Sequence record: MK250017.1
Length of the DNA stretch: 64,000 nucleotides
Direction: 5' to 3' (one strand)
Of the stretch, positions 12,828 through 26,537 are shown piece by piece (positions within the stretch are counted from its first letter, which is position 1; each line of letters begins with the position of its first letter). Under the pieces are notes generated by a model. The model was not told where the DNA came from, did not search any database, and saw nothing but the letters and a program-made list of their open reading frames with translations. The position numbers and the translations under genes are program-made.

Positions 12828-14345
12828 ATGAATAAGAAATTATATAATTCTATAGTTAGAGGAATATCAGAGTCATTATAGAAATCATTGTATGAAGGTT
12901 TGTTTGATGATGTAGATGATATATTATCAAATGATGATATAGATTCTTCTTAGCTAATGGATGATTATTTAAAGAAAGTTATATTGGAAACATTATGTAC
13001 AATTGATGCTTATCATAATGTTGAAGCAGATGAAGATGACGGTTTACCTATGATAAAATAGAATCCTGATAATAATTTATAGTATTATATTGCTCCTTAC
13101 ACTACATATAAACGTGAAAAGTTAGGACCTAGAAAAAGGAAGAGATATAATTTAAATTATTTCTACAGATATATTTTGACATTTGATGAAACAGGCGGAA
13201 TAATATTAGATATTACAAAATTCGGTAATAAAAGAAATTTCATTATTAATGATCAGTTATATTAGTTTATTTGTAAAACTCCATATACAATAAGTGAAAT
13301 AAAATATCATTTACCATATAATGAATATACTCCATATACAGAACAATGGGAGAAAATATGGATAATAGACAGAACACCACTTTCTAAACCAAAAAATATT
13401 CCAAATTCATTTGTTAATAATTTTCCAGAAAAAATAACACCTATGTATTCTGATGAATTAAAAGATGATATGAATCCATCTAATAATTCTATAATAGGCA
13501 GAGAATGGTTTACATCAGATGAAATGTTTTTAACATTTATACAGAAACTTGTAAATAATCAATTTGATATATCAGATGGAGATTTTTTTGTATATAATTA
13601 GAATACAATAGATGAACGTAGAAAAGAACTTTTATCAGGTAATCAGGATAAACAAATAGAAGAAGAAAATGATGCAAAATTGAATTTCAGTAGAAGTATA
13701 CTGGGTGAAAAATATTATCAAAAATTTAATCAAATTTCGCAATATTTTCAAGAAAATAACATAAAATTTTACTTAAAAACAATAAATACTTTCAGAACAT
13801 GTAAAATTTGTTTAAAAGATACAGTATTGAATTTAAGACGTTAGAATGGATATATATTTGATGAGATTGATAATATAGAAGAACCTAATAGAGTAGAACC
13901 ATTTTTTGAACGATAGCTATTATATAAAATGTTTTGTATAATGAAACATGAAAAATTAAATGACTGGAAAATTCAGCAGACTTATGATGAATGTATAAAT
14001 GGTACTCTGGTAAGTTATAATTTTTATAATACATCAACTTCATATTATGATATAAACACATTACCTATAAAATTTGATAACAAATATGCTATATATAATT
14101 TGTATTATGTAATTGGTAAAGCTATATCAGACAGTAAACCGATTTATGAATTAGGCGTTAAAAAATTTGACAAATATCCATATCAAAATGATGTAACATT
14201 AGGTCCAACATCTATATTAGCTGCTAATGAAATAGAAACAACCGGTAATGCATCATTTAATATGTCAATGTTCGATTATAGTTATTTAACAGATTAGTTA
14301 AAGACAATTATTGATAAAGTTTGTAAAAAATACAAAATAAAGTGA
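12828..14345 (+). CDS. Hypothetical protein (505 aa, TAG=Gln)
   Basis: ATG 12828 to TGA 14343-14345; N-terminus MNKKLYNSIVRGISESLQKSLYEGLFDD. Confidence 0.65.
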
Positions 14346-14358
14346 AATTGTTATTAAT

Positions 14359-14949
14359 ATGAGAATAACCACATTAAACCAATTAAAAGAATATACTACA
14401 TATACATATTATAAATTAAATAAACCTGAATATACAAAAAAGAAAAAAGTTTATATTTGTCAACCTATTAACTATATAGATGAAGGATGTACACATATGG
14501 ATATATGGTCAGGATATATATTTTATAAAACTAATGCAGTTTCCAGGAATGTAGGTTATTATGGTTTTTTATTAGATAAAGAATCAGATGAAACATATAA
14601 TAATATAATTAAAAAACAACCAAAATATCTTGGTAAAATTTCACCTATGTGGTATGTAAATACTACATTGTATAATATACAATCTGAAGAAAATTGTAAG
14701 TTATATAAAAATCTGAAATTAGAAGAAAATCTATTAACAGAAAATAATAAAGCAGTATTTACAGATAAGCATGAAATAGAACAATATATAGATGATATAA
14801 GAAATAATATCATTAAGATTCCAGAAGTAGAACATATTGTTACAATGAAAACATGGTATAATGATAAAGATGGAAATAAAATAGAAGAAACATCAGTTAG
14901 ACATTTACCAAGCGGGAAAACAGATATAATAAAAACAATAATAAAATAA
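14359..14949 (+). CDS. Hypothetical protein
   Basis: 196-aa TAG-free ORF. Confidence 0.65.
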   Translation: MRITTLNQLKEYTTYTYYKLNKPEYTKKKKVYICQPINYIDEGCTHMDIWSGYIFYKTNAVSRNVGYYGFLLDKESDETYNNIIKKQPKYLGKISPMWYVNTTLYNIQSEENCKLYKNLKLEENLLTENNKAVFTDKHEIEQYIDDIRNNIIKIPEVEHIVTMKTWYNDKDGNKIEETSVRHLPSGKTDIIKTIIK

Positions 14950-14960
14950 TGTTAAAATTT

Positions 14961-14990
14961 AAAGTCTTCACAATAATATGTGAAGACTTT
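14961..14990 (+). terminator. Intrinsic terminator
   Basis: aaagtcttcaca / tgtgaagacttt stem followed by a T-run. Confidence 0.7.
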
Positions 14991-15037
14991 TTTATTTATT
15001 ATTATATAAACACTAATTAACTATATTTTTATAAAAA

Positions 15038-16174
15038 ATGAATACTGAAAATAAATTTAATTATGTTCTTGTCGGCGGAACATTTAATGATAATAAAGGA
15101 AAAGAATCTGGCGTAGTGAATAAATTATATCACGCATTAGGTACATTTAATTCTGTTATGTATAATGGTGGTAATTATTTCGATTTGGTTGGTAATGCAT
15201 TATCATCTATTACAGAAACAGATCTTATTATATGGATGGCAGATGTAGATAATGCTAAAGAGAAAATATATCCAGTTAAAAATACAGGTTCTGTATTAAT
15301 TTGCTCAAAAGTTATTAGAGACGGTTATACATATAAAGATGCAATTGCACGTATATTTAAAATGCATGGTAATGCTGTTATTGCAATCACAAAAGATAGT
15401 AAAGCAAATATGTTTATGTTTGAATTTTGGGATGCATTAGCAAATTGTTGGTACAGTGGTTCTGATATTGAAAAATTAGCATTAACAATATATAGATTTT
15501 ATATATTCAGTAAAGGCAGTATTCGTCGACAAACAGCACGAGATACCTCATTAATTAAATATAATGATGGTAGACCTGATGATTTAAATGATTTTATTAG
15601 GTTGAATAATAGTCTTGCTGATTTTATTCAAACGTCGTGTGGTGATAGGTTTTTCGGTAATTTATCTACACGTTGTCAAAAGTTATTTCCATCAGAACGT
15701 GATGGTAAATTTATTTATGTAAGTCCAAGAAATGTAGATAAACATAGGTTAACTCCTTCTGATTTTGTTTTATTTAATACAGATGATTATACTTATTATT
15801 CAGTAGATGAAAAAATAAAGCCATCTGTTGATTCTCCTGTACAATCTGAAATATATAAAGAATTCCCATCTATCAATTATATGATTCATGGACATGCATT
15901 TATATCTATTATGAAAGAGTTAGATGAAAATAATATTCCATGTGCAAGTACAGAGAATTATTTTCCATGTGGAGACTTAAGAGAATTAACAGAAGTAAAG
16001 AAACTTATGAAACATATCATATATGATGAATGTCATAAAGATTATGGTATAATAAATTTGAAAGGACATGGTTTTTTAATGTTCAGTCAGACTTTTGAAC
16101 AAATGAAATATATGATTAATGATATATATGCATTCAAAATGAATGATGGTAAACAATTATTTAAATTTTATTAA
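15038..16174 (+). CDS. Class II aldolase/adducin-family domain fused to an unknown N-terminal domain
   Basis: FGNLSTR, VSPRNVDK, PSVDSPVQSEIYKEFPSINYMIHGH and LKGHGFLMF match the aldolase II metal-binding HxH pattern. Confidence 0.7.
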   Translation: MNTENKFNYVLVGGTFNDNKGKESGVVNKLYHALGTFNSVMYNGGNYFDLVGNALSSITETDLIIWMADVDNAKEKIYPVKNTGSVLICSKVIRDGYTYKDAIARIFKMHGNAVIAITKDSKANMFMFEFWDALANCWYSGSDIEKLALTIYRFYIFSKGSIRRQTARDTSLIKYNDGRPDDLNDFIRLNNSLADFIQTSCGDRFFGNLSTRCQKLFPSERDGKFIYVSPRNVDKHRLTPSDFVLFNTDDYTYYSVDEKIKPSVDSPVQSEIYKEFPSINYMIHGHAFISIMKELDENNIPCASTENYFPCGDLRELTEVKKLMKHIIYDECHKDYGIINLKGHGFLMFSQTFEQMKYMINDIYAFKMNDGKQLFKFY

Positions 16175-16176
16175 TA

Positions 16177-16872
16177 ATGGGAAAATTCAATATTAAATCA
16201 TTATTTGTTGAAGAAACAAATACAGACGATGAAGTTAAAGATACTACAGTCGAAACTTCAAATAATTCAAATAATAAACCAAATGTAGAAAGTAATGTAT
16301 CTACAACAAACGTACAATCACCAGCATCTGTTCCAGCTGATGCATCAGTTAATTCTGGAAAGGAAGAAGTAAATCAAGAACTTCTTAATAAACTATGTAA
16401 TTATCTAGAAACATGTAAAATCGAAGGTGGTGATTATATGCAACTTAAAAAAGCGGCAAACAGTGATGGAATGAAAGTTATTCCAGATGAAGCTGTCAGA
16501 TTCCAAGCTGCATATGCAACGCTAAAAAGTGTAAATCCAAATCTTACAAAAGATATTATTATCAATTCTATTGATACATATATTTCTGAAATGAATAAGC
16601 AATATGATATTGCTATTAAACAGATTGAAGAAAAAAGAAAGATTAATGTAGGTGATAAGAAAAGAGCACATGAGGAGAAAGCTCAACGAATTGCAATGCT
16701 TCAAAAAGAGATTGTAGAATTATCTACTGAAATGACAAAATTATCTGATGAAATTAAAGAAGGTGATGCAGAATGTGATAAGAATGTAAAGGAATTTAGA
16801 AATGCTGTAAATGTTATTGTATCTGCATTGGAATCAGATAAGAAAAAGATTTCTGAAAAGTTAGTAAATTAA
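16177..16872 (+). CDS. Coiled-coil hypothetical protein
   Basis: Long heptad-like C-terminal half; first gene of the envelope/ABC cluster. Confidence 0.7.
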   Translation: MGKFNIKSLFVEETNTDDEVKDTTVETSNNSNNKPNVESNVSTTNVQSPASVPADASVNSGKEEVNQELLNKLCNYLETCKIEGGDYMQLKKAANSDGMKVIPDEAVRFQAAYATLKSVNPNLTKDIIINSIDTYISEMNKQYDIAIKQIEEKRKINVGDKKRAHEEKAQRIAMLQKEIVELSTEMTKLSDEIKEGDAECDKNVKEFRNAVNVIVSALESDKKKISEKLVN

Positions 16873-16876
16873 TAAT

Positions 16877-17059
16877 ATGAGAGTAATAATTAAAAATTAC
16901 GATTCTACAAAAGCAAAAGATATTATTATTCCTGTAGAAAATAATATGGATAAACATGTAGACTTTTCAGGCGGTTATGTTGTATTAAATGATGCAAATG
17001 GTAATAAAGTTGTTTATGTAGATTTTATGAAATATCCTGAAGTAACATTAGATTTATAA
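16877..17059 (+). CDS. Small hypothetical protein
   Basis: 60-aa ORF tightly packed between its neighbours. Confidence 0.5.
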   Translation: MRVIIKNYDSTKAKDIIIPVENNMDKHVDFSGGYVVLNDANGNKVVYVDFMKYPEVTLDL

Positions 17060-17074
17060 TAATTAAATAAAAAT

Positions 17075-18139
17075 ATGGCAGAATATAACACAAGTGATAT
17101 TGTAAATGTAGCAAAAAATACAGTATCAAAATGGGAAAAACCTGGTGGAACAACAGGTATGATTGTATTAGGTGTTGTAGTAGGTGCAATTGCAATTAAT
17201 ATTACACCTATTATGAATTTTATTGCAGCAGCATGCGCAAGTACACTATCTGCAATTGGTATGGCGGCAGCACTTTTTCTAGTTTTATATTGTTTATTTG
17301 ATCCTCGTATTCGTAATATTGGTTCAACAATATATTTTATGATTATGCGTAAGATTGAAGGTCTTCTTGTTGATTATGATCCAATCTCTATTGTTAAGAG
17401 AAAGATTATGCAGATGAATAAGAAGATTCAGGAAATTACTGATAATATGGGAAAGCTTCGAGGTCTTATTGATAAATCAGAAAAACGTATTCAAGATAAA
17501 AAGAAACAATGTGATCATGATTTTCAACTATTGAATAAGTATAAAGAAACTGGTAAAGCACAAGATGCTGCTGTATATGAACGACAAGTTACTCGCCTTA
17601 CTGAAGTAATTAAAAATTCAGAAGCACGACTTATTCAGTCAAAGCAATGGTATGAAATTATGGGTAAACTGAAACACCAGGCTGAATTAACAGTACTTGA
17701 TGCAACAAATGAAGTAAATGAACGTGTAGAAGAGTGGGAAATGATTAAAGCGCAGCATAAGGCATTTACATCTATTGTTGGAATTATTAATGGTAAGGAT
17801 GATCAGTTTAGTTTATTTACTCGTGCAATGGATCATATGGCAGATGATATTTCACAGAAACTTGGAGAAATGTCATTTATCATCGAGGAAACAGGTGGTT
17901 TGATGTCAAAGATTGATATGGATAATCTTGTGATGTCAGATAAAGCAAATGCACTTCTTGCACAATATAATTCTGGTGGTCTTGATGCTGTTCTTCTTGG
18001 AAGTTTTGCAAAGCAACCAATTGAACACGCACCAGCAGAAAATGTAGAGTTCAAAGAAGCAGAATTTACAAATTTGAATACTATTACAAATAATAGGAAT
18101 AATGTACAACAAACATTAGGCCAACCAAATTGGTTTTAA
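17075..18139 (+). CDS. Membrane-anchored coiled-coil protein, PspA/IM30-like
   Basis: Two N-terminal hydrophobic helices followed by ~250 aa of coiled coil. Confidence 0.6.
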   Translation: MAEYNTSDIVNVAKNTVSKWEKPGGTTGMIVLGVVVGAIAINITPIMNFIAAACASTLSAIGMAAALFLVLYCLFDPRIRNIGSTIYFMIMRKIEGLLVDYDPISIVKRKIMQMNKKIQEITDNMGKLRGLIDKSEKRIQDKKKQCDHDFQLLNKYKETGKAQDAAVYERQVTRLTEVIKNSEARLIQSKQWYEIMGKLKHQAELTVLDATNEVNERVEEWEMIKAQHKAFTSIVGIINGKDDQFSLFTRAMDHMADDISQKLGEMSFIIEETGGLMSKIDMDNLVMSDKANALLAQYNSGGLDAVLLGSFAKQPIEHAPAENVEFKEAEFTNLNTITNNRNNVQQTLGQPNWF

Positions 18140-18146
18140 TAAAATT

Positions 18147-18182
18147 AAAGAGAATTGTGTAAAAAATACATGATTCTCTTTT
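18147..18182 (+). terminator. Intrinsic terminator
   Basis: aaagagaattgtgta / tacatgattctcttt imperfect stem plus T-run. Confidence 0.6.
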
Positions 18183-18201
18183 TTATTTTTAAAAATATAT
18201 G

Positions 18202-18209
18202 TATCTTTG
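18202..18209 (+). promoter_or_regulatory. Bacteroidota-type -7 promoter element TATCTTTG
   Basis: Matches the TAnnTTTG consensus; upstream of ORF 18231. Confidence 0.6.
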
Positions 18210-18230
18210 AATTAATAAAATATTTATGTT

Positions 18231-18560
18231 ATGATAAAAATAGTTGATACATCATATTATATTATTAATAATAAAGAAAAGAAAGAATTATTTATATATT
18301 ACGATACAGAACATAAATTGGATTGTAATATGGATATACTTTCTTTTCAATTAGATTTTAATCTCAAAGATATTGATAATGATAATAAAGATGAAATTAT
18401 TGAACAATATTTTAAAGATAATTGGACAAGATTTTTTATGATAAAATCAGTACCATATGGAGATTTAATGTCTATTGGTATTTCATTTGAACAAATATTA
18501 AATATGGTTAATGAAATAGCTAAATCAAAAATAATATTTGAAGATTATAAATCAATTTAA
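18231..18560 (+). CDS. Hypothetical protein
   Basis: 109-aa ORF downstream of the promoter motif. Confidence 0.55.
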   Translation: MIKIVDTSYYIINNKEKKELFIYYDTEHKLDCNMDILSFQLDFNLKDIDNDNKDEIIEQYFKDNWTRFFMIKSVPYGDLMSIGISFEQILNMVNEIAKSKIIFEDYKSI

Positions 18561-18648
18561 TAGACTTTTTAATAAACACGATATAAAAGAAAAATAGAGA
18601 ATAATATTAAACATTAATTTAAATAACTTTAATTAAGAATTAAAAATT

Positions 18649-20238
18649 ATGGCAAATGTTGTTTTGCGACCTTGGGTAAAGGTTGTTGGTGTTATTGCAG
18701 TTGTTGCTGCAATTATGTTTGGTGCTTCTAAATTTTTTGGAGGCAGTAATGATGGTGATAATAAGTCATCGAGTGACAGCGGCGGTTTTTTCAGCAGCAT
18801 GTTTTCTGGTGGTGATGATGATGTAATCACCATTGGTACAAATACTTATGCAGGTTTTCTGCCATTTATGTATTTGAATAATGGTCTTGAACCTAATGAA
18901 GATTGTCCTATTTATAAGGAATATGGTCTTAAGTTGAAGATTGTTGTTCAGGATGATTTTGCTGCAGGACGTGCAGCATTCAATAATGGTGATATTGACA
19001 TTATTTATTGTACTGCTGATGCTCTTCCTGTTGAGATGAGTGAAGGTTCAAATATGAATGATGCTCGTTTCTTTAATGTATCAAACTGGTCACGTGGAGC
19101 TGATGCTATTGTAGTTAATAAGAGTATTCAGAATGTAAGTAACTTGATTGGTAAGGTTGTTTGTTGCTCTCAGGGTACAGCATCTCATACACTGTTGTTG
19201 AATACACTTGAAACAAATGGTATTGGAGCTGATAAGGTAAATATGGGAAATTCTACAGATCCTAATAAGGTTAATATTAAGGTTGTAGATAACGGTCTTG
19301 AAGCTGCTTCTGCATTCCGTGCAGGTTCTTGTGATGCAGCTGTTGTATTCTCTCCAGATGATCAGGATTTGGTTGCAACTGTAAAGGGTGCACATGTATT
19401 GATTTCAACAAAGCAAGCATCTAATATTATTTGTGATGGTTTGATTGCAAAGCAGAGCTACCTTGATTCTAATAAAGAGAATGTAAAGAAACTTATTTCT
19501 GCATTGTTGTATGCAAATGATAAAATGAATAGTGACGAAGCAGCAGTAAAGATTGCAGCTAAGGCTTTTGCAAAGGCATATGGAACAGATGAGAAGTTTG
19601 CAATTGATGGTTCTAAGAATATTCATTATATTACATTGGGAGATGCACAGAACTTCTTTGGTTTGAATAGTTCATATACAGGTATGCAGGGTGATGAGCT
19701 ATATTCAAAAATGGCACGTACTTATGAAAAGTTGGGTCTTTGTAAGAAACCACTTTCATGGCGAAAAGTTTCTTATCCTGATATTATTGAATCACTTGCA
19801 TCTAATGCTGGTGAAGTAAAGGGTGATCAGGCTGCAGAAGCATCAGTAAAGTTTAAAGAAACATCTACATCTGATGCAGAAACAAAGACTGCAATTTCAG
19901 ATAAGAAGGTAACTATTGAATATCCTGTTGATAGTGATATTCTTGATAATAATGCGCAGTGTATTATTGATAGAGAGTTCGCTGGTATTGCAAAGCAGTT
20001 TGCAGGTGCAAAGATTCGTATTGTAGGAAATACTGATAATACTGGTAATTATGCATATAATGTTGAATTGTCACGAAGACGTGCACAATCAGTTGCAAAT
20101 TATCTTGTAAAGGAATATGGATTTGATAAGAATCGATTCATTATTGTTGGTAATGGTCCTAAACGTGCAGTAGAAGATAAAGTAGTAGGAAGTAATAATG
20201 CATATCGTACTACAGATTTTCAGTTGGTAACAGAGTAA
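18649..20238 (+). CDS. ABC substrate-binding protein (NMT1/SsuA-like) fused to a C-terminal OmpA-like peptidoglycan-binding domain
   Basis: N-terminal membrane anchor; periplasmic-binding-protein motifs (IGTNTYAGFLP, SNWSRGADAIV, QGTASHTLL); OmpA motif IVGNTDNTGNYAYNVELSRRRAQSVANYL. Confidence 0.82.
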   Translation: MANVVLRPWVKVVGVIAVVAAIMFGASKFFGGSNDGDNKSSSDSGGFFSSMFSGGDDDVITIGTNTYAGFLPFMYLNNGLEPNEDCPIYKEYGLKLKIVVQDDFAAGRAAFNNGDIDIIYCTADALPVEMSEGSNMNDARFFNVSNWSRGADAIVVNKSIQNVSNLIGKVVCCSQGTASHTLLLNTLETNGIGADKVNMGNSTDPNKVNIKVVDNGLEAASAFRAGSCDAAVVFSPDDQDLVATVKGAHVLISTKQASNIICDGLIAKQSYLDSNKENVKKLISALLYANDKMNSDEAAVKIAAKAFAKAYGTDEKFAIDGSKNIHYITLGDAQNFFGLNSSYTGMQGDELYSKMARTYEKLGLCKKPLSWRKVSYPDIIESLASNAGEVKGDQAAEASVKFKETSTSDAETKTAISDKKVTIEYPVDSDILDNNAQCIIDREFAGIAKQFAGAKIRIVGNTDNTGNYAYNVELSRRRAQSVANYLVKEYGFDKNRFIIVGNGPKRAVEDKVVGSNNAYRTTDFQLVTE

Positions 20239-20249
20239 TAAAAATATAT

Positions 20250-20305
20250 AAACATGCGGTTTATAGAATAATATAATTTTAATTATATTCTATAGATCGC
20301 ATGTT
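20250..20305 (+). terminator. Long hairpin terminator
   Basis: aaacatgcg...tatagaata.atataatt / aattatat.tctataga.tcgcatgttt. Confidence 0.6.
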
Positions 20306-20317
20306 TTTAATTTAGTT

Positions 20318-20770
20318 ATGAAATATAGAAATGATTTAATAGGTAAAAAAATTTTAATTATATGTAATAGTATAGGCAGCAGTTATAAAAGGTTATATTG
20401 TTCTTATGTATTAGGAAAAATAATTGAATATAACCCAGCTACAAATAAGATTATGGTTATTAGAAATACTGGACATATTGGTTCAGCTGTTGAATTTAAA
20501 ATTAATAATCATGATCCTTTTGAATATCCATATTATTTTGATAATCGGTTCGCATCAAGAGAACCAGAAAATGATAATGAAACATGGTGGTATGTAGCAT
20601 TTGCTGATGATGAAGCTATACAATTATTAAAACGAAATTTATTAAAACAAAATAATAGAAGACCTGTATATAAATCATACTATTTATCAACTCTTTGCTA
20701 TGGTAAACATAAATCTAAAAAAGAATATTTAACATATCTATTAAATGAATTAAACAATGAATCTAATTAA
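20318..20770 (+). CDS. Hypothetical protein
   Basis: 150-aa ORF inserted between the binding protein and permease genes. Confidence 0.6.
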   Translation: MKYRNDLIGKKILIICNSIGSSYKRLYCSYVLGKIIEYNPATNKIMVIRNTGHIGSAVEFKINNHDPFEYPYYFDNRFASREPENDNETWWYVAFADDEAIQLLKRNLLKQNNRRPVYKSYYLSTLCYGKHKSKKEYLTYLLNELNNESN

Positions 20771-21593
20771 ACGTCTATTTAAATTTGGTGGTGATTCTGA
20801 TTTTGGAACAGTTACCAATGTAATTATTAGTATTATTGGTGCAGTTATTATTATTATGGGATGGCATTGTATTTCAGCATATAACGTAGTACCTAGTAAT
20901 ATTCTTCCTGATCCTTTTAAAGTAATTGGTAGTATTCCAACATTAATTTCAGAAAATCATTTATTTGCAAATATTTGGTATACAGTAAAATTGAATTTAT
21001 CATGTTATGTGTATGCTATTTTATTTTCATTTCCTATAGGATTCTTAATTGCATTGTATCCTATTAATAATATCTTATTTGGAAAATATATTAATTCAGT
21101 CCGATTTATCCCATTGCCTTCTATTACAGGAATTTTCCTTGCAATATTTGGTTTGACATTTGGAATGAAAGTATGGTTTTTAACAGTTGCAATTATGATT
21201 TATATTATTCCATCTGTTGTAAATAAAGTAAATGATTTGCAAAACCCTGCTAATGAAAAAGATAATGTATATTTGCAAACTGCACAGACAATCGGAATGT
21301 CTTCATGGCAAAAATTCTGTTATGTATATTTCCCTTATGTAACAGGTGGTGTAGTTGATTCTTGTATTGACTTATTGGCTATTAGTTATAGTTATGTTGT
21401 TATTGCAGAAATGATTTATAAAGATGGTGCAGTAAGTGGAATGGGTGCATTGATTAATACAATGGTTAGACAATCACAAATGGCATCTGCATTTGCATTA
21501 CTTTTCCTTATTATCATTATCGGTTGTGTACAAGATTTTCTTTTTAAGAAAGGTGCAAAACTATTATTTCCTTACAAATATAAAAATGAATAA
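20757..21593 (+). CDS. ABC transporter permease (SsuC/TauC-like)
   Basis: About six hydrophobic helices; EAA-loop variant YLQTAQTIGMSSWQKFCYVYFP. Confidence 0.85.
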   Translation: MNLIKRLFKFGGDSDFGTVTNVIISIIGAVIIIMGWHCISAYNVVPSNILPDPFKVIGSIPTLISENHLFANIWYTVKLNLSCYVYAILFSFPIGFLIALYPINNILFGKYINSVRFIPLPSITGIFLAIFGLTFGMKVWFLTVAIMIYIIPSVVNKVNDLQNPANEKDNVYLQTAQTIGMSSWQKFCYVYFPYVTGGVVDSCIDLLAISYSYVVIAEMIYKDGAVSGMGALINTMVRQSQMASAFALLFLIIIIGCVQDFLFKKGAKLLFPYKYKNE

Positions 21594-21598
21594 ACAGT

Positions 21599-22543
21599 AT
21601 GAGTGATTTTAAAACATTATTCGGACAAACAAATAATAATCAAGACGAGAAAAAGAATAATATTATTTCTGAACAGAATAATACATCTGTAGATGATTCT
21701 AATATTCAATCAAAGAATACAAATTCACAAGTAATTAATACTACAACTGATGGTAAATATGAATGTGAAGATGTAGATGTATTTAATTTTGTAAATATCA
21801 ATAAATCATTTGGTGATTTTAAGTTATTTGACAATCTTAATCTTACAATTAAAGACTTTAAAGATGAGGGACAATTCATTACATTTATAGGTCAATCTGG
21901 ATGTGGGAAAACTCAGCTTCTTAAGATGATCTCAGGAATCTCAAAACCTGATTCCGGTAAGATTATGTTATATGGTAAGGAAATTAAAGAATCTGATAAT
22001 ATACCTATGGTATTTCAGCAGTATTCAAGTTTTGAATGGATGACTGTTCTAGAAAATATCGCATTACCTATGAAACTTGCTGGTATTGATAAGAAAACGC
22101 GTGAAGAAAGAGCACGTAAAATTATTAATCTTATAGGTCTAGATGGTAGTGAAAATAAGTATTGTAGATATGGTGTATTATCTGGTGGTATGTTGCAACG
22201 AGCATCAATAGGTAGAGCATTAGCATGTGATTCGAAACTATTGATGTTAGATGAATATTCATCTGGTCTTGATTATTTTACAAAATTTGAACTTCAAGAT
22301 TTGCTTCTTAAAATTTTCAATAATAGAGATGTTGACAGAACATTTCTTATGGTAACGCATGATATTTCAGAGGCAGTTTACCTTTCTAATAGAATTTATA
22401 TTTTGGAACCAAAACCTTGTCGTATTAAGGAAGTTATTGATATTAAATTCAGTCAACCACGAACACAAGCTATTCGCGAAACAGATGAATTTAAAGAATA
22501 TTACGCAAAAGTTTTAAAGGCATTAAATGAAACTGTTAAGTAA
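21599..22543 (+). CDS. ABC transporter ATP-binding protein (SsuB/TauB-like)
   Basis: Walker A GQSGCGKT, Q-loop MVFQQYS, signature LSGGMLQR, Walker B LLMLDE, H-loop MVTHDISEAVYL. Confidence 0.92.
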   Translation: MSDFKTLFGQTNNNQDEKKNNIISEQNNTSVDDSNIQSKNTNSQVINTTTDGKYECEDVDVFNFVNINKSFGDFKLFDNLNLTIKDFKDEGQFITFIGQSGCGKTQLLKMISGISKPDSGKIMLYGKEIKESDNIPMVFQQYSSFEWMTVLENIALPMKLAGIDKKTREERARKIINLIGLDGSENKYCRYGVLSGGMLQRASIGRALACDSKLLMLDEYSSGLDYFTKFELQDLLLKIFNNRDVDRTFLMVTHDISEAVYLSNRIYILEPKPCRIKEVIDIKFSQPRTQAIRETDEFKEYYAKVLKALNETVK

Positions 22544-22554
22544 ATTAGATAATT

Positions 22555-22893
22555 ATGGGAAAACATATTTATACATTTGGTGACTTAGAAAAAGGTGATC
22601 ATATATTTAGATATAGAATTGTTAATGATAAAGCTAAAATTGAAACGTTAGTAATAGAAAATATTAAAATTAATAATAATAAAGCTATAATAAGTATAAA
22701 AGATTCTGGTACTATTTATACTATTGATAAAGATAGACAATATATTACTGGTGGTAATAATGATGATTGGTCTAGTTTTGCTCTTGTTTCTGATTATGAA
22801 TTAGTAGAATTTATGAAAACTATTATTAATATAACAAAACAACCTCTTATAAGAGCGCACACAAATATTATGGATTTTATATTAAATAAATGA
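22555..22893 (+). CDS. Hypothetical protein
   Basis: 112-aa ORF. Confidence 0.55.
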   Translation: MGKHIYTFGDLEKGDHIFRYRIVNDKAKIETLVIENIKINNNKAIISIKDSGTIYTIDKDRQYITGGNNDDWSSFALVSDYELVEFMKTIINITKQPLIRAHTNIMDFILNK

Positions 22894-22911
22894 AACTGTT
22901 AAATAAATTAT

Positions 22912-23223
22912 ATGGTATTTTCAGAATTAACAAATAATAATACAGTTACTATATATACAAAAAATGAGGTAAATACTTATTTTGTAAAACGAATAGAATC
23001 TAATAATGTATCAACAAATATATCATTAGAAGACTATAATTATATGATTACAGTTCCAAGAGATGTATCATTTTATATATTACATATAAATAATGATATT
23101 TCTATTATCACATGTGACAATAGAATAATTGAGTTAATTAATACGGTTAAGAGATTAACAAAAAATTCTATAGGTCTTCAACTAAATGAACTATTTGGAA
23201 ATGTATTCAAAACAAATATTTAA
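22912..23223 (+). CDS. Hypothetical protein, possible paralog of 22555-22893
   Basis: 103-aa ORF; MVFSELTNNNTV parallels YTFGDLEKGDHI with similar beta-rich spacing. Confidence 0.5.
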   Translation: MVFSELTNNNTVTIYTKNEVNTYFVKRIESNNVSTNISLEDYNYMITVPRDVSFYILHINNDISIITCDNRIIELINTVKRLTKNSIGLQLNELFGNVFKTNI

Positions 23224-23277
23224 TTATAAATCATGGGTATTTTTTATCCATGATTTTTTTATTTTGAATAAAATATG

Positions 23278-23285
23278 TATCTTTG
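23278..23285 (+). promoter_or_regulatory. TAnnTTTG promoter element
   Basis: TATCTTTG just after a terminator hairpin (23228-23256) and before ORF 23312. Confidence 0.65.
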
Positions 23286-23311
23286 TATTATTAATAAAAT
23301 AATTAATTATT

Positions 23312-23836
23312 ATGAAGCAGTCTAAATTGTATACTAAGAATGAAGGAGGAAATTGTCATAGAGGTCATAATCATGGTTCTGAAAAGAAATACAGATCTCG
23401 ATATGATAGACATAAAAAGATTACAAAATTTGAAATTGATAATGAAATAACAAGGAAGAAATCTCATTATAATAAAAATAAACGAACAAATTATGATTAT
23501 GGACCTCTATATAATTACTTACTTAAACAAGTAGGAAAGAAATGGGAAACTGTATGGAAAGATATATTTCCACGTGTTGATAACAATTCTGAACCTATTT
23601 TATATATGGTTATAAATATAAATACACATGGAGTTGTTATTACACATGATATAAGTAATGCAGAACCTATGTTTAATTGTTCATTATATAATAATGGTGT
23701 TCGTTCTTATTCAACATTATATGTTGATGAAAATGATATATTACAATTTGTTGATAAAGATTTCAAACCCAATGATAGATATGAAGGTCTTGGCTTTGGA
23801 CAATCTTTCAATGGAAAAGAAATTTCTACCATATAA
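23312..23836 (+). CDS. Hypothetical protein
   Basis: 174-aa ORF, basic N-terminus, DYGPLYNYLLKQVGKKWE...STLYVDENDILQFV. Confidence 0.65.
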   Translation: MKQSKLYTKNEGGNCHRGHNHGSEKKYRSRYDRHKKITKFEIDNEITRKKSHYNKNKRTNYDYGPLYNYLLKQVGKKWETVWKDIFPRVDNNSEPILYMVININTHGVVITHDISNAEPMFNCSLYNNGVRSYSTLYVDENDILQFVDKDFKPNDRYEGLGFGQSFNGKEISTI

Positions 23837-23857
23837 TTTTTTTATTTGGAATAAAAG

Positions 23858-23907
23858 GTGTATCTTTGTATTGTTAATGAAATAATAAACAATTAAAAAT
23901 ATAAAGA
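23858..23907 (+). promoter_or_regulatory. Promoter and leader module, copy 1 (repeated at 26592-26641)
   Basis: gtgtatctttgtattgttaatgaaataataaacaattaaaaatataaaga; 49 of 50 bases identical to copy 2; contains TATCTTTG. Confidence 0.75.
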
Positions 23908-23910
23908 AAA

Positions 23911-24237
23911 ATGAGAGCAAATTTCACAACAGTTATCAAAAAGAGAGCAATTAAAAATGTACCAGCATTTCATGAGTTCTCTATGAGACAGATTAAGGTT
24001 ATTAGTAATTCAGCTAATTATCCAAATTCTGTTACATTGTCTATGGACATTTATTGTGATAATGTTGATGGATATATTTTCAATAATGCATCTACAAATG
24101 AGCAATATGCACTTACTGCAATTCAACTCAGTAAAGCATTACAGAAGATGATAAATAATAGAAAATGTTATAAGCCTAATAGTGAATCTGATTTACTTAG
24201 ACTTACATTTGATATTATTGAATCTTTTAAATTTTAA
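23911..24237 (+). CDS. Hypothetical protein
   Basis: 108-aa ORF downstream of the promoter module. Confidence 0.6.
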   Translation: MRANFTTVIKKRAIKNVPAFHEFSMRQIKVISNSANYPNSVTLSMDIYCDNVDGYIFNNASTNEQYALTAIQLSKALQKMINNRKCYKPNSESDLLRLTFDIIESFKF

Positions 24238-24479
24238 TTGATTTAATGTAGACAATAATAAGATATTAGTATATAATATATAAATTGTTTAATGAAACAA
24301 ATTAATGAATTTAAAATTAAATTNNNNNNNNNNNNNNNNNNNNNNNNNNAATTAATAATAAATAACATATAAATAATATAACAATTAAAAACAAACGCTT
24401 ATTTAATTTTCGTAGCGTTATGGATAAGTTGAATGAAAATTCAGAAATTCCTTTTAGGACGAAGATACTAGTTATGTAT

Positions 24480-24565
24480 GCCAAGATGGTGGAATAGGTA
24501 GACACGCTAGACTTAAAATCTCGTGGACTGAAAAGTCCGTACGGGTTCGAGTCCCGTTCTTGGTA
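24480..24565 (+). tRNA. trnL: tRNA-Leu (anticodon TAA), CCA not encoded
   Basis: Acceptor GCCAAGA/TCTTGGT+A, D-loop GGAATAGGTAGAC, anticodon loop CTTAAAA, long variable arm TGGACTGAAAAGTCCG, T-loop GGTTCGAGTCC; followed by CAA. Confidence 0.93.
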
Positions 24566-24621
24566 CAAAAATTATTATAGAGAATAAACAACATATGTTT
24601 ATTCTCTATTTTTTATATAAT

Positions 24622-25398
24622 ATGGCATATATAAATTTACATAAAATATCTGATACTTTATATAAATGTGATTGTGGAAAAGAATTTAATTCTGCACGTT
24701 CATTAGCATCTCATGCTAGATTTTGTAATTAGTATATAAAAGTAGATAAAACGACAATATATAAACAAAATGATGTATATAAATGTGAATGTGGTAACAC
24801 ATTTAAAAATTATTAGAGTTTTAATGCACATTTATCACATTGTGATATTCATCATAATTATAATAATACTACAAGAAAATTAAGACCATCTGAATTATAT
24901 CATACAATGTCATGGGATAATAAATCATTATTTGAAATAGAAATGATTAGATAGAGATCTGGACAAACATTTTCAAAAAAACAAAAAGCTGGAGAAATAA
25001 TTAATTGGTGGAAAAATAGGCATTTAACAAATTTACATAAATTACATATACGCGAAGGTATGTTAAATTATTTAGATAATTTATATGATACACATATATA
25101 GGCGCATTATAATAAAAAATCTATTTAGTTTATAAATGATTTAAATCTAAAAAATAATTGGCATTTACAACATGCTGAAAACGGAGGAGAAATACGTTGT
25201 TTAGGATATTTTTTAGATGGATATGATAAGGAAAAAAATATTGTATTTGAATATGATGAATCTAGACATTATATAGATGTTTATAATAATATATTAAGTA
25301 AAAAAGATATAGAACGACAAAATAACATTATTGATAAATTACATTGTCAATTTTGGAGATATAATGAAAAAATAAAATTATTATATAGAGTATATTAA
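24622..25398 (+). CDS. Homing-endonuclease-like protein: two C2H2-like Zn fingers plus PD-(D/E)xK domain (258 aa, TAG=Gln)
   Basis: CDCGKEF...SHARFC and CECGNTF...AHLSHC; GYFLDGYDKEKNIVFEYDESRH; 5 in-frame TAGs. Confidence 0.75.
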
Positions 25399-25400
25399 TC

Positions 25401-26537
25401 ATGATTACAATAACAGAACAATATATAAAGGATTATAAAGATAAGTTAGATAAAATAGCAAAGTCATTCGATTTGGATAAACAGAAGATAATCGTTGAAG
25501 AATTATCTATTAAAGTTTCAGCACCAGATTTTTGGGATGATTTTGAAAATGCAACAACTATTACAAAGGAACTTAATACAGCAAAAGAAAAGATTAAAGA
25601 TGTTTCACATATCAATATATTAATAGATGATCTTGAAACTGCTTTAATGTATTATAAAGAGTTTGAAGGTAAGGATGAAGAAGAACTTGTTAATCTTGCT
25701 AATGATGAATTAATTAAAGAATTTAAAATATTTGAAAACAAATATAGATTTGTAGATCCGACTGATTCATTGGGAGCAGTATTAGATATTAATGCAGGTG
25801 CAGGTGGAACAGAAGCAAATGATTGGGCAAATATGTTATTCAGAATGTATGATATGTGGGCTAAATCAAATGGTTATAAATTTAAGATTTTATATTATTC
25901 AGAAGGTGATAAAGTAGGTATTAAAAATGTATCTATTGAAATTACCGGTAATAATGCATATGGTACATTAAAAGGTGAAACTGGTGTTCATCGTCTTGTT
26001 CGTGTTTCTCCTTATAATGCGCAGGGAAAGAGAATGACAAGTTTTGCGGCAGTTTCTGTTGTTCCGTTGGTAGATAATTCAATTAAAGTTGAAATTGATG
26101 AGTCTAAATTAACAATAGATACATTTAGATCTTCTGGTGCCGGTGGACAAAATGTTAATAAAGTTGAATCAGGTGTACGTGTAAATTATATGTATACAGA
26201 TCCTGATACAGGTGAAACTGAAAAGATTCAGGTTGCAAATACAGAAACGCGTGATCAACCAAAAAATAAGGAACGTGCAATGCAAATTCTTAAATCTATT
26301 CTTTATAAAAAAGCGTTAGATAAACAGCTTGCAAAGAAAAAGGAAATTGAAGATGCTAAACTAAAAAATGAATGGGGTGCACAGATTAGATCTTATGTAT
26401 TTGATGATAAGCGTGTAAAGGATCATCGTACTGGTTATCAAACAACTGATGTTGATTCTGTTATGAATGGAAATTTAAATGGATTTATAGAATCTTATAA
26501 TAATTGGATAATTGAGCAGGAAAATAATAAACTTTAA
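25401..26537 (+). CDS. prfB: Peptide chain release factor 2
   Basis: GAGGTEANDWANML, GETGVHRLVRVSPY (RF2 SPF-type specificity motif, SPY), SSGAGGQNVNKVESGVR (GGQ), WGAQIRSYV. Confidence 0.95.
   Translation: MITITEQYIKDYKDKLDKIAKSFDLDKQKIIVEELSIKVSAPDFWDDFENATTITKELNTAKEKIKDVSHINILIDDLETALMYYKEFEGKDEEELVNLANDELIKEFKIFENKYRFVDPTDSLGAVLDINAGAGGTEANDWANMLFRMYDMWAKSNGYKFKILYYSEGDKVGIKNVSIEITGNNAYGTLKGETGVHRLVRVSPYNAQGKRMTSFAAVSVVPLVDNSIKVEIDESKLTIDTFRSSGAGGQNVNKVESGVRVNYMYTDPDTGETEKIQVANTETRDQPKNKERAMQILKSILYKKALDKQLAKKKEIEDAKLKNEWGAQIRSYVFDDKRVKDHRTGYQTTDVDSVMNGNLNGFIESYNNWIIEQENNKL

What the first reader, a model, noticed from the sequence alone, without database searches (positions are those of the whole stretch)
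16177..22543. Phage-encoded envelope module: coiled-coil and PspA-like proteins plus a complete ABC system with an OmpA-fused binding protein
Seen: co-oriented, TAG-free genes for a coiled-coil protein, a 2-TM coiled-coil protein, a membrane-anchored NMT1/SsuA-like binding protein with a C-terminal OmpA domain, an SsuC-like permease and an SsuB-like ATPase with intact Walker A, Q-loop and H-loop. Established: OmpA-C domains bind peptidoglycan, and PspA/IM30 proteins remodel or repair inner membranes. Complete ABC importers are rare in phages. Inference: this is an early-expressed machine tethered to the cell wall. It could import a small ligand for the virocell (pyrimidine/thiamine precursor or sulfonate), maintain membrane potential during a long infection, or mediate superinfection exclusion. 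I know of no described function for this gene set.
Basis: partly seen in the sequence, partly recalled or inferred. Interest (0 to 1): 0.8.

Follow-up and report, generated by a model that had tools for sequence, protein, structure and literature searches.

The report
Host-type PspA–ABC envelope operon in megaphage
Prevotella megaphage Lak-A1 carries an intact copy of a five-gene bacterial envelope operon, and the same operon sits in ordinary Bacteroidota chromosomes and in many other phages, so it is a borrowed host module of still-untested function rather than a new phage invention.

Summary
The window is Prevotella phage Lak-A1 (100% identity), and all the described genes are present, intact and free of in-frame TAG.

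The core is five genes:
- CC-A, a coiled-coil protein (16177-16872).
- A protein with a two-helix membrane hairpin and a divergent PspA/IM30-like domain (17075-18139).
- A membrane-anchored TauA/SsuA-like binding protein fused to an OmpA peptidoglycan-binding domain (18649-20238).
- A permease (20757-21593).
- An ABC ATPase with all catalytic motifs (21599-22543).

Three small ORFs found only in close Lak relatives are interspersed.

The five genes stay together, in this order, in Lak relatives, in a 735-kb phage and in unrelated metagenome contigs. In permuted order the set occurs in Bacillus phage G (gp243-gp249) and in dozens of 75-150 kb phage contigs.

The same contiguous operon also lies in Bacteroidota chromosomes among housekeeping genes. 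The signature gene was found in about 4-6% of sampled genomes, and nine of the fourteen loci I fetched held all five genes. So it is a cellular operon carried by phages, not a phage-specific machine, and the contig is not chimeric.

The PspA link rests on predicted fold and on bridging sequences. Direct profile matches fail.

Two papers already note PspA/Snf7 genes next to ABC systems; one of them describes the binding-protein–OmpA fusion. No function has been tested. My best reading is a wall-tethered importer of a small amine-bearing anion, coupled to inner-membrane stabilisation.

The parts
16177..16872 (+). CC-A: 231-aa cytoplasmic coiled-coil partner. It has a short N-terminal motif, a disordered linker (residues 1-61), a small helical domain (67-119) and one helix of about 100 residues (125-228).
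   Evidence: ORF and AF2 model. No known fold was found in PDB or the Atlas. The gene always lies directly upstream of the TM-PspA-like gene in phages and bacteria. dN/dS is 0.30.
16877..17059 (+). 60-aa small ORF of unknown function, an insertion found only in close Lak relatives.
   Evidence: Conserved only in the closest Lak genomes. No family was found.
17075..18139 (+). Membrane-anchored divergent PspA/IM30-like protein. It has a TM hairpin at about residues 25-75, a helix at 77-101 (alpha0 equivalent), a D-P-I motif at 102-104, a long hairpin (103-159 and 162-238) and further helices to 309.
   Evidence: AF2 model with pLDDT 76. The Foldseek top 10 are all Vipp1/PspA, and the top two Atlas clusters are PspA_IM30. 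Bridging proteins link the family to PspA. The family has 751 clusters at 50% identity. dN/dS is 0.06.
18147..18181 (+). Terminator-like hairpin (15-bp stem followed by a T-run) directly after the PspA-like gene.
   Evidence: One search found 10 such sites in 11 kb against 1.5 expected. The longest X11 RNA-library contig ends at 18240, about 60 nt past the hairpin.
18231..18560 (+). 109-aa small ORF of unknown function, an insertion found only in close Lak relatives.
18649..20238 (+). Signal-anchored substrate-binding protein. It has a TM helix (about 10-28), a Gly/Ser-rich linker, a TauA/SsuA-like (NMT1) domain (about 58-400) and an OmpA_C peptidoglycan-binding domain (about 425-529).
   Evidence: (phrog_25518 matched over the full length). 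Family-invariant residues D152 and D263 align with the taurine-amine ligands Glu106 and Asp205 of TauA. OmpA residues D463 and R478 are present.
20318..20770 (+). 150-aa small ORF of unknown function, an insertion found only in close Lak relatives. It overlaps the permease start by 14 nt.
20757..21593 (+). ABC type-I importer permease (TauC/SsuC/SaoP-like) with about six hydrophobic segments.
   Evidence: A homologue carries PF00528. dN/dS is 0.07.
21599..22543 (+). ABC ATPase (TauB/NtrCD/SaoA-like) with a low-complexity N-terminal extension of about 60 aa. All catalytic motifs are intact.
   Evidence: It is only 44% identical between Lak-A1 and Lak-B, whereas the permease is 94% identical.

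Best explanation
This is a phage-borne copy of a conserved cellular (Bacteroidota-type) five-gene envelope operon.

**Shown**
- Three genes encode a complete type-I ABC importer of the nitrate/sulfonate/taurine (NitT/TauT) family.
- Its binding protein is not free. An N-terminal transmembrane helix holds it in the inner membrane and a C-terminal OmpA-like domain should hold it on peptidoglycan.
- Two co-inherited cytoplasmic-face proteins accompany it. One is a PspA/IM30 (ESCRT-III superfamily)-like protein fixed to the membrane by a TM hairpin. The other is a long coiled-coil partner, CC-A.

**Inferred**
- During the long Lak infection the cassette is probably made while the host code is still in use, because none of its genes needs TAG decoding.
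- The transporter takes up a small anionic solute with an amine group (taurine-like or aminoalkyl-sulfonate/phosphonate-like) at a fixed, wall-tethered site.
- The PspA-like/CC-A pair keeps the inner membrane around it sealed and energised.
- The phage therefore supplies its own copy of a host envelope-maintenance and uptake unit.
For: **Architecture.**

**Conserved five-gene synteny**
- Lak relatives and the 735-kb phage.
- Metagenome contigs at 22-40% identity and 25-57% GC.
- In permuted order, phage G gp243-gp249 and dozens of mid-sized phage contigs.

**Chromosomal copies**
- They have housekeeping flanks (PBP1C, CstA, a PhoR/PhoB-like pair, MlaD, IlvE-like, a P-type ATPase) on contigs of 4.9-6 Mb.
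- Lak proteins are 25-45% identical to them.

**PspA-like status.** The fold searches put Vipp1/PspA first. The DPI motif aligns with the EDPI motif of PspA. Bridging proteins link the two families.

**Binding protein.** The nearest solved relatives of the SBP are TauA (8e-16) and SsuA (3e-14). The two acidic residues that bind taurine's amine in TauA (PMC6906117) align with family-invariant D152 and D263.

**Selection and expression.** Purifying selection is seen. There is no in-frame TAG. RNA-library contigs from four studies cover the cassette at 95-99% identity.

**Prior notes of the association.** PMC11237479 and the 2026 preprint.
Against: - No function has been tested anywhere.
- All transporter matches fall far below NCBIfam's curated cut-offs (for example 67.8 against 163.5 bits for SsuA_fam), so the substrate is not assigned.
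- The ligand inference rests on one profile-to-sequence alignment.
- The cassette occurs in soil, gut and Gram-positive-infecting phages, which argues against a habitat-specific solute such as taurine.
- Direct profile comparisons of the 354-aa family with PspA are not significant.
- RNA-library contigs cannot prove transcription or its timing.
- No physical link between the coiled-coil proteins and the transporter is shown.
- A terminator-like hairpin separates the two halves in Lak-A1.
Confidence: 0.5

Rival explanations
1. The cassette is an ATP-driven envelope-remodelling or mechanotransducing machine rather than a nutrient importer. The ABC ATPase cycle would act on or through the membrane-anchored ESCRT-III-like polymer and the wall-tethered periplasmic domain. 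It would stand in for the AAA+ partner (Vps4/PspF) that other PspA/Snf7 systems use. The 'binding protein' would serve as a tether or sensor.
For: - The five genes are inherited as a unit across very distant phages and bacteria.
- A related operon described in PMC11237479 adds a TM-Snf7 and AAA+ ATPases.
- One distant locus has a faint AAA hit downstream.
- Wall tethering of an SBP is unusual for simple uptake.
- The CC-A/TM-PspA pair also exists alone, so it is a functional unit that the ABC part joins.
Against: - The permease and ATPase are ordinary type-I importer parts, not MacB/FtsX-type mechanotransmitters.
- The SBP keeps a conserved TauA-like pocket.
- No AAA+ gene lies near the Lak cassette.
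Confidence: 0.17
2. The cassette is a superinfection-exclusion or anti-defence device. The wall-tethered inner-membrane complex would block DNA entry of competing phages or mask an envelope receptor.
For: - The cassette lies in a TAG-free, presumably early block.
- It sits in the envelope.
- It is widespread in phages.
Against: - The same operon is chromosomal in non-prophage contexts.
- Nothing in it resembles known exclusion proteins.
Confidence: 0.06
3. The cassette is an assembly chimera or a decaying passenger of host DNA with no role in the phage.
For: Host-like homologues exist. GC is slightly raised at 16-20 kb (0.30 against about 0.25).
Against: - The stretch is identical or near-identical in six independently assembled Lak genomes and syntenic in nine Lak-B genomes and in IMG/VR contigs up to 554 kb.
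- The ORFs are intact and dN/dS is 0.06-0.30.
- GC is about 27-31% against 35-65% in the bacterial copies, so the sequence has long been adapted to the phage.
Confidence: 0.02

Closest known systems
PspA/Snf7-associated operons with an ABC ATPase, a permease and a PBP+OmpA protein (Ravi et al., mSystems 2024, PMC11237479; example OGG56892.1, Candidatus Handelsmanbacteria)
   Same: A PspA-superfamily gene lies directly upstream of a signal-anchored binding protein fused to OmpA, followed by a permease and an ABC ATPase. A membrane-anchored ESCRT-III-like protein is present.
   Different: The published example has a soluble PspA plus a separate TM-Snf7 and a double AAA+ ATPase. The Lak-type cassette has one TM-anchored PspA-like protein and the CC-A partner, and no AAA+ gene. 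That paper did not describe phage copies.
Huge-phage PspA loci next to complete ABC transporters (Yuan and Chen, bioRxiv 2026, 10.64898/2026.10.24.761521)
   Same: In phages above 200 kb, 15 of 189 PspA genes neighbour a complete SBP/ATPase/permease system. The authors propose membrane-stress mitigation.
   Different: I could not verify whether Lak is among the 15. In my tests the Lak 354-aa family misses NCBIfam's PspA model (TIGR02977), and the precomputed Pfam field is empty for its close relatives. The paper does not describe the OmpA fusion, the CC-A partner, the chromosomal origin or the occurrence in phages below 200 kb.
TauABC/SsuABC alkanesulfonate importers of E. coli (TauA, PDB 6ssy; SsuA, PDB 2x26)
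   Same: The SBP fold family is the same and these are the best solved relatives. Permease and ATPase are of the same family. The acidic residues at the positions of TauA Glu106 and Asp205 are conserved.
   Different: All scores lie far below the curated cut-offs. The SBP is TM-anchored and OmpA-fused rather than free in the periplasm. The substrate is unknown. There are no tauD/ssuDE-type downstream enzymes.
PspA/Vipp1 (IM30), the bacterial ESCRT-III proteins
   Same: The predicted helix order and the long alpha1-alpha2/3 hairpin match. The D-P motif sits at the alpha0/alpha1 junction. Bridging sequences link the families.
   Different: A two-helix TM hairpin precedes the alpha0 equivalent, so the protein would be permanently membrane-bound. 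There is no direct significant sequence match. No PspBC/PspF partners were seen.
MotB/Pal/YiaD-type inner-membrane or lipoprotein anchors with an OmpA_C domain
   Same: The C-terminal OmpA-like domain carries the conserved Asp/Arg of the peptidoglycan-binding site.
   Different: Here the domain is fused to a solute-binding domain, not to a stator plug or a lipoprotein.

Membership tests
ABC type-I importer, NitT/TauT (taurine/sulfonate/nitrate) family | Nucleotide-binding subunit with Walker A, Q-loop, LSGGQ signature, Walker B with catalytic Glu, D-loop and H-loop | tested here: met
   The motifs were read in the translation: GQSGCGKT 98-105, Q140/Q141, LSGGM 194-198, LLMLDE 214-219, SGLD and H254. 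NCBIfam hits to TauB, NtrCD and SaoA have E 1e-49 to 5e-54.
ABC type-I importer, NitT/TauT (taurine/sulfonate/nitrate) family | BPD_transp_1-type permease with a cytoplasmic EAA coupling loop | tested here: inconclusive
   SaoP/TauC-like hits have E 5e-17 and 1e-8. A homologue carries PF00528. About six hydrophobic segments are present. The EAA loop appears only in degenerate form (QTAQTIG...FP, read), and I did not analyse it further.
ABC type-I importer, NitT/TauT (taurine/sulfonate/nitrate) family | NMT1/SsuA-class substrate-binding protein | tested here: met
   TIGR01728 E 9e-19. Homologues carry PF09084 NMT1. The family profile hits TauA at 8e-16 and SsuA at 3e-14.
ABC type-I importer, NitT/TauT (taurine/sulfonate/nitrate) family | Score above the curated equivalog cut-off for a named substrate system (TauABC, SsuABC, SaoXPA) | tested here: not met
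   All bit scores are far below the cut-offs: SsuA_fam 67.8 against 163.5, TauC 34.6 against 342, SaoA 183 against 360. No substrate can be assigned by membership.
PspA/IM30 (PF04012, TIGR02977), ESCRT-III superfamily | Significant direct sequence or profile match to the family model | tested here: not met
   No PspA hit was found for the Lak protein or for any of 135 family members. hhalign against PspA profiles gave a probability of about 1.3-1.5%. The PspA HMM found no cassette protein.
PspA/IM30 (PF04012, TIGR02977), ESCRT-III superfamily | Homology through intermediate sequences, in the same register | tested here: met
   Four Bacteroidota proteins of 250-285 aa match the 354-aa family HMM at about E 1e-12 (three of them; the fourth at 5e-6), with HMM positions 77-216 on residues 3-141. 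They also match a PspA HMM and TIGR02977 colinearly over the full length, at E 3e-5 to 3e-4. Their own HMM finds the cassette proteins starting just after the TM hairpin.
PspA/IM30 (PF04012, TIGR02977), ESCRT-III superfamily | Fold: alpha0, long alpha1-alpha2/3 hairpin, alpha4 and alpha5 | tested here: met
   The AF2 model has helices at 77-101, 103-159, 162-238, 244-272 and 277-301. The Foldseek top 10 are all Vipp1/PspA (E 3e-3 to 4e-2, probability 1.0). The hairpin alone superposes on PspA 4whe at rmsd 2.1 A. The top two Atlas clusters are PspA_IM30. Long helical hairpins are common, so this alone is weak evidence.
PspA/IM30 (PF04012, TIGR02977), ESCRT-III superfamily | Forms rings or rods and remodels or seals membranes | not testable with these tools
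   This needs purified protein, EM and liposome or proton-leak assays.
OmpA_C-like peptidoglycan-binding domain (PF00691) | Domain match plus the conserved Asp and Arg that bind the peptide stem | tested here: met
   YiaD, PA1041 and Pal models match at E 6e-16 to 3e-11. PDB OprF C-domain matches at 2e-10. In GNTD(463)NTG...LSRRR(478)A, R478 is invariant and D463 is kept in the Lak-type copies. That these two residues bind peptidoglycan is taken from my knowledge of the family. Binding itself was not tested.
Phage auxiliary (host-derived) gene module | Homologous operon in cellular chromosomes outside prophages, and maintained in phage genomes under selection | tested here: met
   Chromosomal copies have housekeeping flanks. 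Phage copies are reported. dN/dS is 0.06-0.30. The direction of transfer is not resolved by the tree.

The most novel reading that the evidence does not exclude
The five genes form one machine in which an ABC ATPase, not an AAA+ enzyme, powers or gates a membrane-anchored bacterial ESCRT-III-like polymer. The machine would be pinned to the cell wall through the binding-protein–OmpA subunit. That would be a new type of envelope-remodelling or repair device shared by Bacteroidota and many large phages, with the 'solute-binding' domain acting as sensor or tether rather than as a nutrient receptor.
Probability: 0.12. Interest if true: 0.8.

Novelty: new member of a known kind. Interest (0 to 1): 0.45.

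Why it matters
The PspA-like gene family behind this cassette is large: 751 clusters at 50% identity. It received no family annotation in the sources I checked (no Pfam entry on record for close relatives, no NCBIfam match). It has no tested function.

It recurs in phages of very different size and host, and the full cassette lies in several Bacteroidota chromosomes. This suggests an envelope function useful enough for phages to carry their own copy.

Two tractable systems carry the cassette and could settle what it does: the cultivable Bacillus phage G (gp243-gp249) and any culturable Bacteroidota carrier.

For Lak itself, the finding moves from "unexplained phage machine" to [quoted passage not shown].

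Tried and rejected
- **Complex prediction.** The cytoplasmic part of the PspA-like protein was folded with CC-A. The tool returned no verdict (score 0.00, below the mark). This is evidence neither for nor against binding.
- **Direct sequence tests for PspA membership.** All were negative: NCBIfam on the Lak protein and on 135 relatives, the family profile against PDB, which gave only generic coiled-coil hits, and hhalign against two PspA profiles. The PspA profiles were shallow, because the homologue search returned only proteins at least 74% identical.
- **First homologue search.** The search for homologous proteins on the 354-aa protein listed only 99%-identical copies. The representative-library search was needed to reach distant relatives.
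- **Genome scan with the 135-sequence alignment.** The scan with the SBP-OmpA alignment used one OmpA-domain pattern. It found only five full-length hits, all on short MAG contigs, plus OmpA-only Hymenobacter hits. For a while this wrongly suggested phage specificity. The genome search with the family HMM corrected that.
- **CC-A fold.** No match to any known fold was found.
- **Class II ~190-aa proteins.** They match the CC-A profile only weakly (E 0.03-0.17), so their orthology rests mainly on gene position.
- **Sao system.** It gives the best NCBIfam names but is rejected as membership, because the scores are below the cut-offs and there is no selenoprotein context.
- **Sigma-70 promoter scan.** It was uninformative: 81 sites against 96 expected.
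- **AAA+/Vps4-like partner.** None was found downstream in Lak. The neighbours are unknown small ORFs and RF2.
- **Tree of SBP-OmpA proteins.** It does not resolve who donated the cassette to whom.

Full report
**What the window is**

The stretch 16177-22543 is 100% identical to Prevotella phage Lak-A1 (MK250015-18). It is 98.9-99.2% identical to Lak-A2 and Lak-C1, and about 78% identical over most of its length to nine Lak-B genomes.

Outside a block running from 14359 to about 30535, genes are open only if TAG is read as an amino acid. Within that block one ORF (24595-25398) is the exception. This fits the published TAG=Q recoding of Lak (PMC8346664).

There is no sign of a host/phage chimera:
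- The same flanking genes surround the stretch in several IMG/VR contigs of up to 554 kb.
- GC is about 27-31% across it, against 35-65% in the bacterial homologues.

**Checking the observation**

- **231-aa protein.** It has no TM segment. The model shows a disordered N-terminal 60 residues, a small helical domain and one very long helix.
- **354-aa protein.** It has two hydrophobic helices (about residues 25-75) followed by long helices.
- **529-aa protein.** It has one N-terminal hydrophobic helix, a Gly/Ser-rich linker, an SsuA/NMT1-type binding domain and an OmpA_C domain. PHROGs already holds a family that matches it from end to end, phrog_25518, of unknown function.
- **Permease and ATPase.** Both are of the TauC/SsuC and TauB/NtrCD type. 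The ATPase keeps Walker A, Q-loop, signature, Walker B with the catalytic Glu, D-loop and H-loop (read).

None of the cassette genes contains TAG and all end in TAA. Neighbouring recoded genes carry about 2.3-2.5 TAG per 100 codons.

Three small ORFs (60, 109 and 150 aa) lie between the cassette genes. They are conserved only in the closest Lak genomes.

**The unit is five genes, and it is conserved**

In all Lak relatives down to 47% SBP identity, and in the 735-kb phage LR756501 (41%), the order is CC-A, TM-coiled-coil, SBP-OmpA, permease, ATPase, with nothing in between.

The 354-aa protein belongs to a large family: 751 clusters at 50% identity, mostly 320-360 aa and matched over the full length. 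Two members at about 22-25% identity were looked up. Both sit in the same cassette on unrelated metagenome contigs.

Five contigs in MAGs, with GC from 39 to 57%, carry the set or the part of it that the contig holds.

A second arrangement is permease, ATPase, a coiled-coil protein of about 190 aa, a membrane-anchored coiled-coil protein of about 245-276 aa, then SBP-OmpA. It occurs in Bacillus phage G (gp243, gp245, gp246, gp247, gp249, plus a second SBP-OmpA, gp250) and in dozens of viral contigs of 75-200 kb.

The proteins of about 245-276 aa at the syntenic position match the profile of the 354-aa family in register, with E down to 7e-9. The ~190-aa proteins match CC-A only weakly.

**It is a cellular operon too**

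A profile search found strong matches to the 354-aa family:
- About 18 of 401 sampled Bacteroidota genomes, at E 1e-81 or better.
- 26 of 401 sampled genomes of the order that holds locus L083, a Bacteroidales MAG, at E 1e-20 or better.

I fetched 14 of these loci and nine held all five genes. Eight held the contiguous five-gene cassette (L138, L140, L141, L147, L158-L161) and one held it split into two adjacent divergent units (L139). Two lie on contigs of 4.9 and 6.0 Mb. Their flanks are housekeeping genes: PBP1C, CstA, a PhoR/PhoB-like pair and MlaD in one, and an IlvE-like aminotransferase, a P-type ATPase and a T9SS-sorted protein in the other. These are not prophages.

Lak proteins compare with these copies as follows:

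| Protein | Identity to chromosomal copies |
|---|---|
| SBP-OmpA | 38-41% |
| Permease | 35-44% |
| ATPase | 39-45% |
| PspA-like | 26-30% |
| CC-A | 25-27% |

These figures leave out the far more divergent, high-GC (Hymenobacter-like) copies, which are only 21-30% identical.

In several genomes the CC-A/TM-coiled-coil pair stands alone. It is therefore a two-gene unit that the transporter joins.

A tree of SBP-OmpA proteins shows a monophyletic Lak-type phage clade, a clade of two of the chromosomal copies, the phage G-type clade and a very divergent Hymenobacter-type clade. The deep order is unresolved, so I make no claim about the direction of transfer.

**Is the 354-aa protein PspA-like?**

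Direct sequence tests fail. Three other lines agree with each other.

1. *Fold.* The model (pLDDT 76) has a TM hairpin, a helix at 77-101, a long hairpin (103-159 and 162-238) and three more helices.
   - The ten best Foldseek matches in PDB are all Vipp1/PspA over their full length. The hairpin superposes on E. coli PspA 1-144 at 2.1 A.
   - The two best ESM Atlas clusters are PspA_IM30.
2. *Motif.* The one nearly invariant residue in this part of the family, Pro103 in a D-P-I motif at the start of the long helix, aligns with the invariant E-D-P-I of PspA at the alpha0/alpha1 junction.
3. *Bridging sequences.* Four Bacteroidota proteins of 250-285 aa have a classical PspA N-terminus.
   - They match the 354-aa family profile at about E 1e-12 for three of them and 5e-6 for the fourth.
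   - They also match a PspA profile and NCBIfam TIGR02977, colinearly over the full length, at E 3e-5 to 3e-4.
   - Their own profile finds the cassette proteins starting just after the TM hairpin.

I conclude it is a divergent, permanently membrane-anchored member of the PspA/IM30 (ESCRT-III) superfamily. Confidence is moderate to good. CC-A resembles no known fold.

**The transporter and its ligand**

A profile of the binding domain finds TauA (6ssy, 8e-16), E. coli SsuA (2x26, 3e-14) and X. citri SsuA as the nearest solved structures.

In TauA the amine of taurine is held by Glu106, Thr132 and Asp205. Asp205 is the residue that SsuA lacks (PMC6906117). In the profile alignment Glu106 and Asp205 fall on D152 and D263 (Lak numbering). 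Both are invariant from Lak to phage G, and D263 is nearly invariant in the wider alignment. A Ser/Thr-rich loop (GTASH) aligns with the Thr132 loop.

This points to a small anion with a cationic group, but it rests on one alignment. All NCBIfam scores are far below the curated cut-offs, so no substrate is assigned.

In the OmpA domain, the Arg of the peptidoglycan-binding site (R478) is invariant and the Asp (D463) is kept in the Lak-type copies. The role of these residues comes from my own knowledge of the family.

**Expression**

Contigs assembled from four RNA libraries of four studies (gut, wastewater, pig gut and one coded organism) cover almost the whole cassette at 95-99% identity. The longest X11 contig ends about 60 nt past the terminator-like hairpin at 18147-18181.

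Contigs cannot show strand, level or timing, and DNA carry-over is not excluded. This is therefore only consistent with transcription.

The absence of TAG means the genes can be translated under both codes. The idea that such genes are early comes from the literature on recoded phages as I remember it. It is not shown here.

**How it most likely works**

The shown parts are the architecture, the linkage, the purifying selection (dN/dS 0.06-0.30 for four genes) and the cellular homologues.

The inferred model is a wall-tethered, membrane-anchored binding protein that feeds a TauBC-like importer. On the cytoplasmic face a membrane-anchored PspA-like protein and its coiled-coil partner stabilise the membrane.

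The main rival is that the ATPase cycle serves the ESCRT-III-like protein, giving remodelling or repair rather than uptake. Superinfection exclusion and "junk or chimera" are unlikely.

**Comparison with what is known**

- Ravi et al. (PMC11237479) list an operon [quoted passage not shown]. They suggest a link between membrane remodelling and solute transport.
- Yuan and Chen (bioRxiv 2026) report 15 huge-phage PspA genes next to complete ABC systems.
- The text terms I searched in papers on Lak (PMC8346664) and phage G (PMC12484599) found no mention of this cassette. The 2018 Lak preprint also has one "transporter" mention that I did not read.

The kind is therefore known from comparative genomics. 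This work adds five things:
- The precise five-gene definition, including CC-A.
- The TM-anchored PspA-like family.
- The Lak, phage G and mid-sized-phage members.
- The chromosomal Bacteroidota copies.
- The conserved TauA-like pocket.

**Verdict**

This is a new member of a known but uncharacterised kind. Interest is moderate (0.45).

Noticed in passing
window 25401-26537 (+): The window holds a peptide chain release factor 2 gene (prfB, E 9e-122, above the cut-off). It lies directly after a TAG-containing ORF (24595-25398). This fits the published Lak TAG reassignment, in which RF2 reads only TAA and TGA.
   Followed up: partly
window 15038-16174 (+): A 378-aa protein ends 2 nt before CC-A. 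Its C-terminal half weakly resembles class II aldolase/AraD/MtnB folds (E 3e-8, far below the cut-offs). It is conserved only in close Lak relatives and is not part of the cassette.
   Followed up: partly
window 21599-22543, compared with L005 11849 onwards: The ATPase is only 44% identical between Lak-A1 and Lak-B, while the adjacent permease is 94% identical. The blastn match to Lak-B stops near 20761. This suggests replacement or rapid divergence of the ATPase gene in one lineage. RNA-library contigs of other Lak strains also diverge at 21755, inside the low-complexity N-terminal extension.
   Followed up: partly
window 14000-25000: Terminator-like hairpins are enriched: 10 found against 1.5 expected. 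Strong ones lie at 14961-14990, 18147-18181, 23228-23256 and 24577-24609. They suggest several short transcription units inside the TAG-free block.
   Followed up: no
L001 7806-11011 (phage G gp249 and gp250); L083 6697-9422: The SBP-OmpA gene is duplicated in tandem in Bacillus phage G and on a horse-faeces Bacteroidales MAG contig.
   Followed up: no
L138 5611-6849; L161 6227-7519; phrog_6743: The chromosomal permeases are 350-430 aa, with an N-terminal extension that Lak (278 aa) lacks. The matching PHROG profile is 582 positions long and the permease part occupies only positions 307-531. The extension was not identified.
   Followed up: no
L143, L145, L146 (Bacteroidota chromosomes): The CC-A/TM-PspA-like gene pair occurs without the ABC genes, and some genomes carry two copies. 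The pair is therefore an independent two-gene unit.
   Followed up: partly
L082 11734-12831: On one distant metagenome contig, a 365-aa protein with a faint AAA (PF00004) hit lies just downstream of the cassette. This recalls the AAA+ partner in the published Handelsmanbacteria operon.
   Followed up: no
window 28946-30535 (+): A second ORF of exactly 529 aa lies in the same TAG-free block. It has no NCBIfam hit, and a tblastn search with the SBP-OmpA protein found only one place in each Lak genome, so it is not a paralogue.
   Followed up: partly
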